A stretch of 63,657 bases of DNA, counting the filler, from Octopus bimaculoides (taxonomy: Eukaryota): assembly GCF_001194135.2 (NCBI RefSeq). It is 7 parts of 7 records of this genome, joined end to end, with 100 filler letters (N's around TTAATTAATTAA, not from the genome) between each part and the next. Parts side by side here need not be neighbours in the genome. Positions count along the whole stretch, not along the records: positions 60,740 to 63,657 come from NC_069003.1; 6 more parts are not named here. One strand, 5' to 3'. The notes under the pieces are model-generated. The model made no database searches, was not told the DNA's origin, and worked only from the letters and a program-made list of their open reading frames with translations. Every line of letters starts with the position of its first letter. Within the stretch, counting starts at the first letter, position 1. A program made the position numbers and the translations under genes. This document shows, one piece after another, positions 60,393-63,657 of the stretch.

Positions 60393-60782
60393 TTCCAGAA
60401 AAATCATAATAAATGAATAAAAAACCTGTTGATCAATACGGTTGGAATGTATTATGATCGAACAGCAACAAGAACAACAAAACAACAACAACAACAATAA
60501 TAGCAACAATAACAACAAAGAAATACAAGAAAAGATTTGACAGACAGTGCAACAGATACTTTACGGATAAAAAAATTAAAAAAAACGAAACAAATAAAAC
60601 AGAGGATGTATTCGAAAACAAATAGATCAGAGAACAAAGNNNNNNNNNNNNNNNNNNNNNNNNNNNNNNNNNNNNNNNNNNNNTTAATTAATTAANNNNN
60701 NNNNNNNNNNNNNNNNNNNNNNNNNNNNNNNNNNNNNNNTATGTATGATTGTAATTGGTTGGTTGCATATTTGTTCGTTTGT

Positions 60783-60926
60783 CTACTTGTCTGTTTGTCT
60801 CCTATGTACTAGAAAACCAGTCGACCAATTATGCTCAAACTTGGTATGTTCCTTAAACCTAGGATTAGGTTTTGCACAAACTTGAATCCTGTCCATGACC
60901 ATGGGGTCAAATTTTTGGCCTCCAGG

Positions 60927-60927
<1 letters not shown>
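60783..60927 (-). mobile_element. Non-autonomous repeat fragment, possibly Helentron/DINE-like
   Basis: Minus strand CCAAGTTTGAGCATAATTGGTCGACTGGTTTTC...GACAAACAGACAAGTAGACAAAC. Same architecture as 2490-2690. Confidence 0.3.
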
Positions 60928-60999
<72 letters not shown>

Positions 61000-61133
61000 G
61001 CAAGCAGGCAGGCAGGCAGGCAGGCAGACGGACAAGCAGAAAGACAGAGACATGTGGACGGATGGACGGATGGATGGGTGGATGGGTGTGCGGATGAGAG
61101 AGTAGGTGGATGGACAGAGAGACAGACAGACAC

Positions 61134-61198
<65 letters not shown>

Positions 61199-61728
61199 GG
61201 TACCTGTGATATTGGAGGGTGAGCATGGTGAATAATCATGGAACGAGAGTAGGCGAAGAGAGATTATTTCTGTCAGAGAAGTGCGCGTTTGCTGATTGGT
61301 TAATTTTGGCCATACGTTGGCGGAATTAATTGTAGGAGATGTTGTATGTTAGGCTATGTATGTTTGTATGGAACTGGACGTATAAGAATGGAAATTATGT
61401 GAGAGAGGCTGACGGCAGTGGTATCGATTCAGGCATTCATCACAGAATGCTGTAATTGTATGCCAATGTGGTGCTGTCACCATAAAATGGTGTGATATCG
61501 ATATAGTAAGGTGAAGGGGATAATGACTTAACAGCAAAATGGAATGTCGATTGTATTAATGTTGGAAGGGAGCAAAAACATTTTTTAAGTATAACCAAGT
61601 TTTATTTTGTGCTTTGTTAATTATCGTTCTTAATTATATCATTACCACTGTTGCTGAGAGGTTAGTTTTGAAGAACTACCAAACAGCTTTCACGTCAGAC
61701 TTTAAATATGACGATCGTACTTTTTAAA

Positions 61729-62496
61729 CCCTTTTGATACCAAACCGCCCGAGACTGCCTTTGTTTCTGTGATACAAACTTCCTGTTGTAAAGTAATTTA
61801 AATTAGAACCTTCCATCAAAATTTCATGTTACTTTATGTTTCAAACACCAGCTTAATAATTACAAAGTTATTTCACTAAATTCCTCATTAATTTCAAAAT
61901 TAAGTGAAACAAAGCCTGCGTGCTCCGTAACTGACCTGAGATCGCCCCGAGTTCTATGATAAAATCTTGCTGTTTTAAAGTGATATCGATTTAAAATTTC
62001 TTCCATGAAAATTTCATGTTAATTTATGTCTCAAACATAAGCTTAATAATAAAATTGTAAAGCGAGCAGCCACACCAAAGTGGCAGATAAATATTACTAC
62101 TAGTTTAACCCCAGGTGGATTCTCCACCAGCTGGTTTTCAGAGTAGCTACCCGCTTTATTGTTTAGTATACGTTACTACTCTATCTCTTCTTAAGATTTT
62201 ATAAATAACAAAATTATTTTACTAAATTCACTATTTTCAAAAGTAATTGAAAGAAAGCTAGTGTTGTATGACTATAACCTGACACTTACCCCTGGTGCGA
62301 TACATATATACAAATATACAAACTTTCTGTTTTAAAGTGATATAAATTAAAGCCTATCAAAATTTCATATTGTGTTCCAAACGACAACTTAATAATGACA
62401 ATTCTATTTTATGAATTTTACTAAATTCTTCATTATCTTCAAACTTATTTGGAACAAAAACAGTGTATCTCAGAAGAAATATGGTAAAAAAAAGGG
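61729..62496 (+). mobile_element. piggyBac-type MITE with tandemly amplified ~200-250-bp interior
   Basis: Termini CCCTTTTGATACC / GGTAAAAAAAAGGG, flanked by TTTAAA and TTAA. Interior unit (AAAATTTCATGTTAATTTATG...CTTAATAAT...ACTAAATTC) occurs three times, plus a fourth partial copy at 62501-62640. Confidence 0.7.
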
Positions 62497-62872
62497 TTAA
62501 GTTTATCTAAATTAAAACCTATCACAATTTCATGTTAATTTGCTAATCTCATGTTAATAATGACGAAATTATTTAACTAAATTCTTAATTATTATCAATA
62601 CTCATAGAAACAAAAAGAAATTTGAATTTCAACAAAAGTATGGAAACGAAAGAGTTTAAAATGTCTCGATGCTTTTTTTCTGTCTCTGTCTATGTGAGTG
62701 TGTGTGTGCGTATACGTGTGTGTGTGTCTCTGTCTCTCTCTTCCCTCTCTCTCTTTCCCTCTCCCTCTCTCTCCCTCTCTCTCTCTCTCTCTCTTCTTTG
62801 TTCTCTTCCTTTTTATTATTTAATTTTGTTTTATTTTATATTTCTTTTTGACATGGTTGCCGTTTGGAGCAG

Positions 62873-63286
62873 GATGACAAAAGCACCTTGGACAAACCAC
62901 AAGATGTGCAACGCCGTTACAGCCTGGTACCACCAACGTCTGCCGTTCCAGGCATCAGCTTGACAACCGAAGACAACAGCTGCGGAACCAGTCCCGACTA
63001 CTCACGTCGACCAAGTGCCCATAGCTTGGGAACCTTTAATCTACCCGTAAGTGCTGCTTTTGATCGGTTAACCGGAGGCAGTTTGTATCGGCGCTCCAGC
63101 GCCCACAGCCTGGGGGTGCTGCCAATTGGCCTGAGCGGGCACACAGAGTGGGGTAGCAATTCCAGCCGACGTTCGAGCTCGCATAGTTTGGGTATGTACT
63201 CCCTGAGCTATTTCGGTGAAGATGGCTGGAGTAGACAAAGTTCTCGGAGGACAAGCGCCCATAGTCTTGGACCGGTGATCATGCCC
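62873..63286 (+). CDS. Internal coding exon (phase 0-0, 138 aa) with four RRxS(A/S)HSLG modules; protein unidentified
   Basis: Long polypyrimidine tract, GAGCAG| acceptor, CCC|GTAAGT donor at 63287, open frame. The motif amino acids are conserved while their codons are synonymously diverged. Confidence 0.8.
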
Positions 63287-63657
63287 GTAAGTTCATACAG
63301 AAATAATAGTCCAATGTGAAACAAAAAAAACACCCCTGCTGTGATTACTGTGATCTCTGGATGTTGTCAATATCGGCACCCACCCGTGCGACTACCCGCC
63401 CACCACCCTTTTTCTCTTGACTTATACACGTTTGCCCTCTCAGCTCCACGCCAAATCAATCAAAAGACAGACATACCACAAAGTTTAATCGTAGTTTGCA
63501 TACACATACATGCACATACGCATACACACACTTAGAGAAACCTGCAGACATATTATATATATGCATATATATATATATATACTCACGTACACACATGTAT
63601 GCACATGCTTGTATACAAATATATATATGCATGTATGTATGTATGTACATATATATA

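What the first reader, a model, noticed from the sequence alone, without database searches (positions are those of the whole stretch)
63041..63319. Two identical in-frame CCC|GTAAGT donors could switch the protein between one and four phospho-modules
Seen: consensus donors at 63047 (after module 1, HSLG-TFNLP|V) and 63287 (after module 4, HSLG-PVIMP|V). They sit at the same offset from the motif, are both phase 0 and are 240 nt apart. Read-through gives a third outcome, a stop at 63317-63319 (VSSYRNNSPM*). The acceptor is also a NAGNAG (GAG/CAG, +/-Gln). Inference: alternative 5' splice choice tunes phosphosite number, and the donor was duplicated together with the repeat unit.
Basis: partly seen in the sequence, partly recalled or inferred. 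Interest (0 to 1): 0.7.

Follow-up and report, generated by a model that had tools for sequence, protein, structure and literature searches.

The report
Conserved internal splice donor in octopus SCYL2
An exon in the tail of the octopus trafficking protein SCYL2 carries two identical in-frame splice donors; the inner one is preserved letter for letter across molluscs, so it is very probably a real alternative splice site that removes three of four repeated kinase-target motifs, though this has not been seen in octopus RNA.

Summary
CCC|GTAAGT occurs at 63047 and 63287, both phase 0 and 240 nt apart. The exon holds four RRxSxHSLG modules, a GAG/CAG acceptor and a read-through TGA. It lies in the C-terminal tail of Octopus bimaculoides SCYL2 (RefSeq LOC106871153 is a fragment model). 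The octopus and Argonauta models use the distal donor.

Comparative data give the inner donor strong indirect support. It reads GTAAGT in 9 of 9 long-form contigs (8 lineages, three mollusc classes). Of 35 invariant degenerate amino-acid columns, only its two codons are identical in all lineages. Gene models in zebra mussel and a land snail splice from it. Oysters and annelids have only the one-module layout. The 240-nt stretch between the donors is itself under coding constraint.

The best reading is an ancient alternative 5' splice site giving one- or four-module tails. Unproven: use of the inner donor in octopus, any regulation, and phosphorylation. Three further RRxS sites are constitutive, so "one versus four" overstates the switch. 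It is a new instance of a known mechanism, of moderate interest.

The parts
62727..62794 (+). (TC)n polypyrimidine tract in the upstream intron, about 80-145 nt before the acceptor. It may be part of an extended pyrimidine tract or a regulator-binding region (not tested).
   Evidence: TRF; sequence.
62867..62872 (+). Tandem NAGNAG acceptor GAG|CAG. The RefSeq octopus model uses the CAG (exon starts at 62873, DDKST...). The Argonauta model carries an extra Gln, consistent with use of the GAG (exon would start at 62870).
   Evidence: AAG|CAG in the second cephalopod (L002/L008); a plain YAG in all six non-cephalopod molluscs.
62873..63046 (+). Common exon body, present in both predicted isoforms. 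It encodes DDKSTLDKPQDVQRRYSLVPP...RRPSAHSLGTFNLP and contains RRYS (62912-62923) and module 1 (63005-63031).
   Evidence: The model P0001 maps here. dN 0.10 against saturated dS versus the second cephalopod.
63044..63052 (+). Proximal (inner) 5' splice site CCC|GTAAGT, GT at 63047-48, phase 0. It corresponds in position to the only donor of oysters.
   Evidence: GTAAGT in 9 of 9 long-form contigs. Its two codons are the only ones of 35 invariant columns that are identical in all lineages. It lies in the longest identical run between the two cephalopods, 63044-63060. Used in the Dreissena P0020 and Bradybaena P0076 models.
63047..63286 (+). Alternative 240-nt (80-codon) extension encoding modules 2-4 (RRSSAHSLG 63089-63115, RRSSSHSLG 63167-63193, RRTSAHSLG 63245-63271). 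Exon if the distal donor is used; intron if the proximal donor is used.
   Evidence: Continuous ORF. dN 0.12 versus dS about 2 against the second cephalopod. Modules conserved across mollusc classes. Included in the octopus and Argonauta models.
63284..63292 (+). Distal (outer) 5' splice site CCC|GTAAGT, GT at 63287-88, phase 0. It is the donor used by the annotated octopus and Argonauta models and joins to EMERRGS... about 43.6 kb downstream.
   Evidence: GTAAGT in 7, GTGAGT in 1 and GTAAGA in 1 of the 9 long-form contigs. Similarity to the second cephalopod ends just after it.
63287..63319 (+). Read-through frame VSSYRNNSPM, ending at TGA 63317-63319. Intronic and not conserved as protein.
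   Evidence: Read-through peptides differ in every lineage. No AATAAA or ATTAAA up to 63657.

Best explanation
The exon (62873-63286) belongs to the disordered C-terminal tail of the octopus orthologue of SCYL2/CVAK104. In mammals the C-terminal region of this clathrin-coat-associated pseudokinase binds clathrin and AP complexes.

The exon has two 5' splice sites with the same nine bases (CCC|GTAAGT), both in phase 0 and both compatible with the phase-0 acceptor of the next exon.
- Splicing from the outer site (63287) gives a tail with four R-R-x-S-x-H-S-L-G modules.
- Splicing from the inner site (63047) removes 80 codons and leaves module 1 only. That layout is collinear with the oyster and annelid proteins.

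Origin (inferred): the inner site looks like the older exon end. The extension, with its own copy of module end plus donor, arose by tandem duplication before the mollusc classes split. The old donor has since been kept under nucleotide-level selection because it is still used.

Shown: the sequence anatomy, the gene identity, coding constraint on the extension, letter-for-letter conservation of the inner donor, and annotated use of either donor in other molluscs.

Inferred: that octopus itself uses both donors, that the choice is regulated, and that the modules are sites for basophilic kinases, so that splicing sets their number.
For: Gene identity:
- The exon translation is 100% identical over its full length to XP_014772948.1. 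The 858-aa Argonauta protein in the same cluster carries a Pkinase domain (E 1.1e-25) and this tail.
- Relatives are named SCY1-like protein 2 by RefSeq.

Anatomy:
- Sequence features.
- The downstream exon has a phase-0 acceptor ...GGTCAG|GAGATG.

Conservation of the inner donor:
- It reads GTAAGT in Octopus, two contigs of a second cephalopod, two gastropod-type contigs, a Mytilus-type and a Ruditapes-type bivalve, and two unplaced molluscs.
- Of 35 invariant degenerate columns across 8 lineages, only GTA and AGT at this site are identical in all. The other 33 show 2-6 codons.
- Exon codon usage gives P about 2e-6 for 5 independent lineages and 8e-9 for 7.
- The longest identical run between the two cephalopods, 17 nt, is centred on it, although synonymous sites are saturated.

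Use of each donor:
- Dreissena KAH3782679.1 (SLGPFSFS|DSENRRGS) and Bradybaena BsWGS_19332 (SLGPFS|DMDRRSS) splice from the inner donor. Both annotation pipelines used RNA-seq.
- Octopus, Argonauta, Babylonia, Ruditapes, Aplysia, Physella and Elysia models use the outer donor.
- Oysters have only module 1 followed by a donor (CAT|GTAAGC). The annelids Ridgeia (cluster) and Dimorphilus have a single module followed directly by the downstream sequence.

Coding extension: dN 0.12 versus dS about 2, and modules 2-4 are conserved across classes.
Against: - No octopus or other cephalopod transcript with the 63046-to-next-exon junction was found. The protein collection holds only distal-donor models for cephalopods.
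- The two inner-donor models come from automatic pipelines. BRAKER3 also used mollusc protein hints, which could favour the short junction.
- There are no conserved intronic blocks next to the exon between the two cephalopods, and no distinctive RNA structure at either donor. Nothing therefore points to a regulatory mechanism.
- The two annelid ORFs look as if they have no intron at this position (DNA not checked), so 'ancestral exon end' holds within molluscs at best.
- Phosphorylation is not tested.
Confidence: 0.68

Rival explanations
1. The long exon is constitutive in octopus. The inner GTAAGT is conserved as a U1 snRNP binding site that is not itself cleaved, for instance as an exonic element that helps define this exon next to a 43.6-kb intron. 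The short gene models in other molluscs are then prediction artefacts.
For: All cephalopod models use the distal donor. The inner-donor models come from automatic pipelines, one of them with protein hints. No intronic conservation or RNA structure suggests regulated choice.
Against: Oysters really end the exon at the corresponding position, and annelid proteins are collinear with the short form, so the short product is a viable protein. By general knowledge, a perfect GTAAGT identical in its nine bases to the outer site would be expected to compete for splicing. Two independent annotations in different classes chose it.
Confidence: 0.2
2. Coincidence. Val-Ser after module 1 is conserved for protein reasons, and the codons GTA AGT are shared by chance or codon bias. 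The inner GT has no RNA-level function.
For: Val-Ser is conserved at the protein level in all long forms. Ser codons in this exon are mostly AGY.
Against: None of the 33 other invariant degenerate columns keeps one codon in all lineages, yet both of these do. GTA is only 16% of the other Val codons, and AGT is 44% of AGY. Joint chance is 2e-6 or less. Residues just before the site vary in identity and number (PFS, SFSAY, YSFP, PLVVP, TFNLP), while the six bases never change.
Confidence: 0.03
3. The short form is the real or major product. The 240-nt stretch is mostly intron that happens to stay open, so the four-module models reflect partial intron retention.
For: The short layout is the only one in oysters and annelids. 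Dreissena RefSeq XP_052224776.1 reads through even the distal donor, which shows that unspliced RNA influences models at this locus.
Against: The stretch is under clear purifying selection as protein: dN 0.12 versus dS about 2 between cephalopods. RRPSTHSVGILPISMFGEGGEKPRRPSTHSLG is almost invariant across gastropods and bivalves. Similarity between cephalopods stops only after the distal donor.
Confidence: 0.07

Closest known systems
Alternative 5' splice-site selection between competing consensus donors in one exon (textbook cases: BCL2L1 Bcl-xL/xS, adenovirus E1A; named from general knowledge)
   Same: Two GT donors in one exon share a single downstream acceptor, and the choice adds or removes an in-frame protein segment. 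Both sites are conserved.
   Different: The two sites here have identical nine-base cores, so intrinsic strength cannot decide between them. They appear to derive from a duplication of module plus donor. Use of both in one species is not yet demonstrated for octopus.
Origin of alternative splicing by tandem duplication (the tandem exon duplication model, from general knowledge)
   Same: A duplicated coding unit with its splice signal creates alternative isoforms. Module number is evolutionarily fluid here: 1 in oysters, 4 in cephalopods, 5 or more in heterobranch snails. An oyster-type ORF shows a recent triplication of exon end plus donor.
   Different: What was duplicated is the 3' end of an exon with its donor, not a whole exon. 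The outcome is nested 5' splice sites rather than mutually exclusive exons. The duplication is too old for DNA-level proof (41 nt at 71% identity).
SCYL2 / CVAK104 (SCY1-like pseudokinase 2)
   Same: The full-length Argonauta orthologue has the N-terminal kinase-like domain followed by a long helical region and a tail. Relatives are named SCY1-like protein 2. In mammals the C-terminal segment binds clathrin and AP complexes (PMC4774220).
   Different: The repeated RRxSxHSLG tail modules and this splice architecture are not described for SCYL2 in the papers searched. Whether vertebrate SCYL2 has a homologous motif was not tested.
NAGNAG tandem acceptors
   Same: GAGCAG lies at the intron end. 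The two candidate acceptors are 3 nt apart and would add or remove one Gln.
   Different: The upstream GAG is, by general knowledge, the least-used acceptor type. The motif is present only in the cephalopods sampled (GAGCAG, AAGCAG), and dual use rests on two gene models that differ by one Gln.

Membership tests
SCYL2 (SCY1-like protein 2) orthologue | N-terminal protein-kinase-like domain in the same polypeptide as this tail | tested here: met
   Argonauta hians GAB1610733.1 (P0002, 858 aa) contains this exon's sequence at 97-99% identity and matches Pfam Pkinase at E 1.1e-25, residues 60-314. This was tested on the orthologue, because the octopus N-terminal exons lie outside the piece and outside locus L001.
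SCYL2 (SCY1-like protein 2) orthologue | Orthology to proteins that curated pipelines name SCYL2 | tested here: met
   Relatives with the same tail are named SCY1-like protein 2 in Dreissena, Babylonia, Crassostrea virginica, Elysia marginata and Octopus sinensis, and SCYL2 in Mytilus coruscus.
SCYL2 (SCY1-like protein 2) orthologue | Degenerate catalytic residues (pseudokinase) and central HEAT repeats | not tested
   Not examined; not needed for the finding.
Alternative 5' splice site | Two donor-consensus sites in one exon, both frame-compatible with the downstream exon | tested here: met
   CCC|GTAAGT at 63047 and 63287, both phase 0. The next exon starts in phase 0 after ...GGTCAG.
Alternative 5' splice site | Both sites conserved beyond what the coding sequence requires | tested here: met
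   Inner site: GTAAGT in 9 of 9 contigs, and the only synonymously invariant codons in the exon. Outer site: GTAAGT, GTGAGT or GTAAGA in 9 of 9.
Alternative 5' splice site | Transcripts with each junction in the same species | tested here: inconclusive
   Dreissena has one model spliced at the inner donor and one containing the long exon, but the latter reads through the outer donor. For octopus, only a distal-donor model exists in the collections searched.
NAGNAG tandem acceptor | NAGNAG motif at the intron-exon boundary, with both AGs used | tested here: inconclusive
   The motif is present (62867-72) and is also present as AAGCAG in the second cephalopod. The octopus model starts at D, while the Argonauta model has Q before it. 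There is no transcript evidence, and the motif is absent outside cephalopods.
Basophilic-kinase phosphorylation site (R-R-x-S/T) | Arg at -3 and -2 relative to Ser, in a disordered region | tested here: met
   RRPS, RRSS, RRSS, RRTS and RRYS in the exon. These positions are invariant across molluscs. No Pfam domain matches the exon translation; disorder itself was not computed.
Basophilic-kinase phosphorylation site (R-R-x-S/T) | Actual phosphorylation | not testable with these tools
   Needs phosphoproteomics or kinase assays.
14-3-3 mode I binding motif (R-S-x-pS-x-P) | Pro at +2 from the phospho-Ser | tested here: not met
   The +2 position is His (or Gln in module 1 of some species) in every module. 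Binding is not excluded, but the canonical motif is absent.

The most novel reading that the evidence does not exclude
A splice switch that predates the divergence of the mollusc classes. The original exon-ending donor of the SCYL2 tail exon has been kept, base for base, inside an exon extended by duplication. Cells could then choose between a minimal tail (one module, as in oysters and annelids) and an expanded tail (three extra basophilic-kinase modules). That would set, at the RNA level, how strongly kinase signalling can act on a clathrin-adaptor-associated pseudokinase, with octopus using it in a tissue-regulated way.
Probability: 0.45. Interest if true: 0.55.

Novelty: new member of a known kind. 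Interest (0 to 1): 0.48.

Why it matters
If both donors are used, this would be an unusually old alternative 5' splice site whose signal can be read directly from codon-level conservation. It would also show how tandem duplication of an exon end together with its donor creates nested splice sites.

It would give SCYL2, whose molecular role in neurons is still unclear, a tunable tail with a variable number of putative kinase sites.

Two practical points follow. The RefSeq octopus record LOC106871153 is a fragment of SCYL2 and should be merged with it. Several mollusc gene models at this locus are misjoined or read through the donors.

Tried and rejected
- Pfam on the exon translation: no family.
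- TRF on the exon: no array, because the copies are too diverged.
- RNA folding around both donors in two cephalopods: z-scores +0.5 to +0.9, so no occluding structure.
- Rfam on the piece: nothing.
- Conserved intronic elements between octopus and the second cephalopod: only low-complexity matches, E 0.13 or higher.
- Fetching the Argonauta locus: the gene range is too long, so no DNA was returned.
- Fetching the Dreissena P0020 locus: not on record.
- JGI metagenome scans for more lineages, spliced contigs, or the oyster-type triplication: the first alignment was unusable and two scans found nothing.
- Cephalopod short-isoform proteins: none found. The Octopus sinensis SCYL2 record is a partial that ends before this exon.
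- My first guess that the one-module sequences P0025 and P0026 were vertebrate was wrong. They are annelid, and no claim about vertebrate SCYL2 is made.
- Exitron reading rejected: the 240-nt stretch has no internal acceptor.
- Read-through as a conserved third protein product rejected: the peptides differ in every lineage, and there is no canonical poly(A) signal in the piece.

Full report
**1. What is in the sequence**

The piece (window 60740-63657) is mostly intron, with microsatellites and AT-rich repeats, plus one open exon-like stretch.

- The intron ends ...TTTG GAG CAG|GAT at 62867-72.
- From 62873 the frame reads DDKSTLDKPQDVQRRYSLVPP...RRPSAHSLGTFNLP|VSAAFDRLTGGSLYRRSSAHSLG...RRSSSHSLG...RRTSAHSLGPVIMP|VSSYRNNSPM*.
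- CCC|GTAAGT occurs with its GT at 63047 and at 63287. Both are phase 0, they are 240 nt apart, and each lies five codons after an HSLG. The stop is TGA at 63317-19.
- The repeat finder recovers four 27-nt copies spaced 84/78/78 nt. It also finds a 41-nt module-plus-donor pair, 71% identical, spaced 240 nt.
- These are the only GTAAGT on the + strand of the piece. Only 1.3% of synonymous-codon shuffles of the exon give two or more.

**2. Which gene**

- The exon translation is 100% identical over its full length to XP_014772948.1, 'uncharacterized protein LOC106871153' of Octopus bimaculoides. The piece maps to chromosome CM046623.1.
- That 224-aa model uses the CAG acceptor and the distal donor (…PVIMP|EMERRGS…). 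The next exon lies about 43.6 kb downstream, with a phase-0 acceptor ...GGTCAG|GAGATG. A last small exon encodes MQLFSGK*.
- The model's first exon has no counterpart in relatives and has a degenerate inverted copy nearby. It is probably spurious.
- The same 90% cluster contains an 858-aa Argonauta hians protein. It has a Pkinase-type domain (E 1.1e-25), a long helical region, and this tail at its C-terminus. Relatives in Dreissena, Babylonia, Crassostrea, Elysia and Octopus sinensis are named SCY1-like protein 2.

The exon therefore belongs to the tail of octopus SCYL2/CVAK104. In mammals the C-terminal segment of this pseudokinase binds clathrin and AP complexes (PMC4774220).

**3. Comparative evidence**

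An exhaustive HMMER search and a profile search returned about 60 relatives. Many are ORFs read straight off genomic contigs. These run through the splice sites and so reveal them.

In all long-form sequences, 'VS' follows module 1, and 'VS' (once 'VR') follows the last module.

I fetched the DNA for the following:
- two contigs of a second cephalopod lineage (L002, L008; 76-77% amino-acid identity to octopus, and near-identical to each other; that it is a cephalopod is inferred from this similarity);
- a land-snail-type and a caenogastropod-type gastropod (L004, L009);
- a Mytilus-type and a Ruditapes-type bivalve (L005, L006);
- two unplaced molluscs (L007, L010);
- an oyster (L011).

Results:
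- The inner site is GTAAGT in all nine long-form contigs. The outer site is GTAAGT in seven, GTGAGT in one and GTAAGA in one.
- Across 8 lineages there are 35 columns with an invariant, degenerate amino acid. Only two keep the same codon in all lineages, and they are the GTA and AGT of the inner donor. All the others show 2-6 different codons.
- With the exon's own codon usage (GTA is 16% of other Val codons; AGT is 44% of AGY), the chance is about 2e-6 for five independent lineages and 8e-9 for seven.
- Between octopus and the second cephalopod, synonymous sites are saturated (pS 0.70-0.86). Even so, the longest identical run in the exon is the 17 nt CCCGTAAGTGCTGCTTT at 63044-63060.

The inner GTAAGT is therefore under selection as nucleotides, not only as Val-Ser.

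**4. The 240-nt stretch between the donors is real coding sequence**

- dN is 0.12 against dS of about 2 between the two cephalopods.
- Modules 2-4 are strongly conserved across classes. RRPSTHSVGILPISMFGEGGEKPRRPSTHSLG is nearly invariant in gastropods and bivalves.
- Similarity between the cephalopods collapses just after the outer GTAAGT.

**5. Which donor is used**

- Outer donor: Octopus, Argonauta, Babylonia, Ruditapes, Aplysia, Physella and Elysia models.
- Inner donor: Dreissena polymorpha KAH3782679.1 (…SLGPFSFS|DSENRRGSRGS…) and Bradybaena similaris BsWGS_19332 (…SLGPFS|DMDRRSSRGS…).
- Both of those annotations used RNA-seq: Funannotate/EVM with Trinity and GMAP evidence (PMC9210306), and BRAKER3 with 88 Gb of RNA-seq plus mollusc proteins (PMC12042801). 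This is supportive but not proof, because protein hints could favour the short junction.
- Dreissena's RefSeq model keeps the long exon and reads through the outer donor to a stop.
- Oysters have only module 1 followed by a donor (CAT|GTAAGC) and then the downstream exon.
- Annelid proteins (a Ridgeia cluster-mate and Dimorphilus) have one module, RR[SA]STQS[VM]GP[VI]VVP, followed directly by EPGRRDS. I first took these for vertebrate sequences; that was wrong.

The short layout is therefore a viable, naturally occurring protein.

**6. Mechanism proposed**

Both sites have the same nine-base core, and both are in unstructured RNA. Intrinsic strength cannot decide between them, so context must. 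By general knowledge of competing equal 5' splice sites, the site nearer the intron, here the outer one, is usually favoured. That fits the long form being the one mostly annotated.

- The outer donor gives four modules.
- The inner donor removes 80 codons in frame and leaves module 1.
- RRYS (62912-23) and two RRxS sites in the next exon (RRGS, RRSS) are constitutive. The switch is therefore about 4 versus 7 basophilic sites, not 1 versus 4.

The modules fit the R-R-x-S consensus of basophilic kinases. They do not fit the canonical 14-3-3 mode I motif, because His rather than Pro is at +2. Phosphorylation is inferred only.

**7. Origin**

The last module and its donor resemble module 1 and its donor.
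- The offset from the motif is the same.
- One lineage has SLGPLVVP|VS at one position and SLGPLVIP|VS at the other.

Module number also varies: 1 in oysters, 4 in cephalopods, 5 or more in heterobranch snails. An oyster-type ORF shows QNMGHYNH|VS three times in tandem, which is a fresh duplication of exon end plus donor.

The inner copy looks like the older exon end.

Two annelid ORFs appear to have no intron at this position (DNA not checked). The age of the intron beyond molluscs is therefore open.

**8. Side claims**

- NAGNAG: present in octopus (GAGCAG) and in the second cephalopod (AAGCAG), and absent in the six other molluscs. The Argonauta model has an extra Gln that the octopus model lacks. 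Dual use is possible but unproven, and GAG is a weak acceptor type.
- Read-through: the peptide is not conserved, and no AATAAA or ATTAAA follows within the piece. It is more likely an unproductive intron-retention product than a third isoform.

**9. What failed**

- No cephalopod short-isoform protein was found.
- There are no conserved intronic elements, no RNA structure signal and no Rfam hit.
- The Argonauta and Dreissena loci could not be retrieved.
- The metagenome scans were empty.

**10. Verdict**

The feature is real. It is a new instance of a known mechanism: alternative 5' splice sites created by duplication. The indirect support is unusually strong, resting on deep nucleotide-level conservation of the exon-internal donor. 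Direct RNA evidence in octopus is missing.

Confidence that the inner donor is functional at the RNA level is about 0.9. Confidence in the overall explanation, that it is used as an alternative splice site and in octopus too, is about 0.68. Interest is moderate.

Noticed in passing
L001 10001-10132 and 10970-11071 (O. bimaculoides CM046623.1); window exon 62873-63286: RefSeq XP_014772948.1 (LOC106871153, 'uncharacterized') is a C-terminal fragment of SCYL2. Its first exon has no counterpart in the full-length Argonauta protein and has a 47%-identical inverted copy about 1 kb away, so it is probably spurious. The Octopus sinensis SCYL2 record (P0079) is also partial and ends in Gly/Ser-rich junk before this exon.
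   Followed up: partly
protein P0046 (JGI, oyster-type genomic ORF): The exon end plus donor read-through is repeated three times in tandem (HQNMGHYNHVS, HQNMGHYNHVS, HQNIGHYNHVS). This is a recent duplication of exon end with its splice donor, the same kind of event proposed for the octopus exon. The DNA could not be retrieved.
   Followed up: partly
proteins P0059-P0061 (Mytilus coruscus SCYL2 models): These models read through the distal donor into a very long VTCNIDR-type minisatellite and rejoin the true downstream exon (EFDRRGSKNS). This looks like an annotation artefact that inflates the protein to about 1400 aa.
   Followed up: no
protein P0052 (Dreissena polymorpha RefSeq XP_052224776.1): This model ends by reading through the distal donor (…YWMN|VSPWMSPDPDSYPPP*), while the GenBank model of the same gene splices at the inner donor. 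Unspliced or intron-terminated RNA may be common at this locus.
   Followed up: no
proteins P0050 and P0051 (annelid-type genomic ORFs): …SLGPVVVP-EPGRR… is contiguous between what look like an acceptor read-through and a donor read-through. That suggests there is no intron at this position in those annelids. Not checked at the DNA level.
   Followed up: no
window 62727-62794: A (TC)n tract of about 68 nt sits 80-145 nt upstream of the acceptor and is followed by T-rich sequence. It is an unusually long CU-rich region that could bind pyrimidine-tract proteins.
   Followed up: no
window 60927-61198 and 61770-62620: A (GATA)n microsatellite is interrupted by (CAGG)n and GGATG-type repeats. There are also four degenerate copies of an AT-rich element of about 150-350 nt in the upstream intron. 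No Rfam match anywhere in the piece.
   Followed up: partly
window 63044-63060: The 8 nt after the inner donor (GCTGCTTT, two Ala codons plus TT) are also identical between the two cephalopods despite saturated synonymous sites. GUGCUGCUU contains two YGCY motifs. Other molluscs do not share this.
   Followed up: no
L001 63029-63037: The donor of the next exon (…GESV|) is also GTT|GTAAGT, so three consecutive phase-0 GTAAGT donors serve the tail of this gene.
   Followed up: no
loci L004 and proteins P0012, P0038, P0078: Heterobranch gastropods carry extra, shorter modules (RRPSMAGILPVSP, sometimes duplicated) between module 1 and the conserved core. The alternative region there would hold five or more sites.
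   Followed up: no
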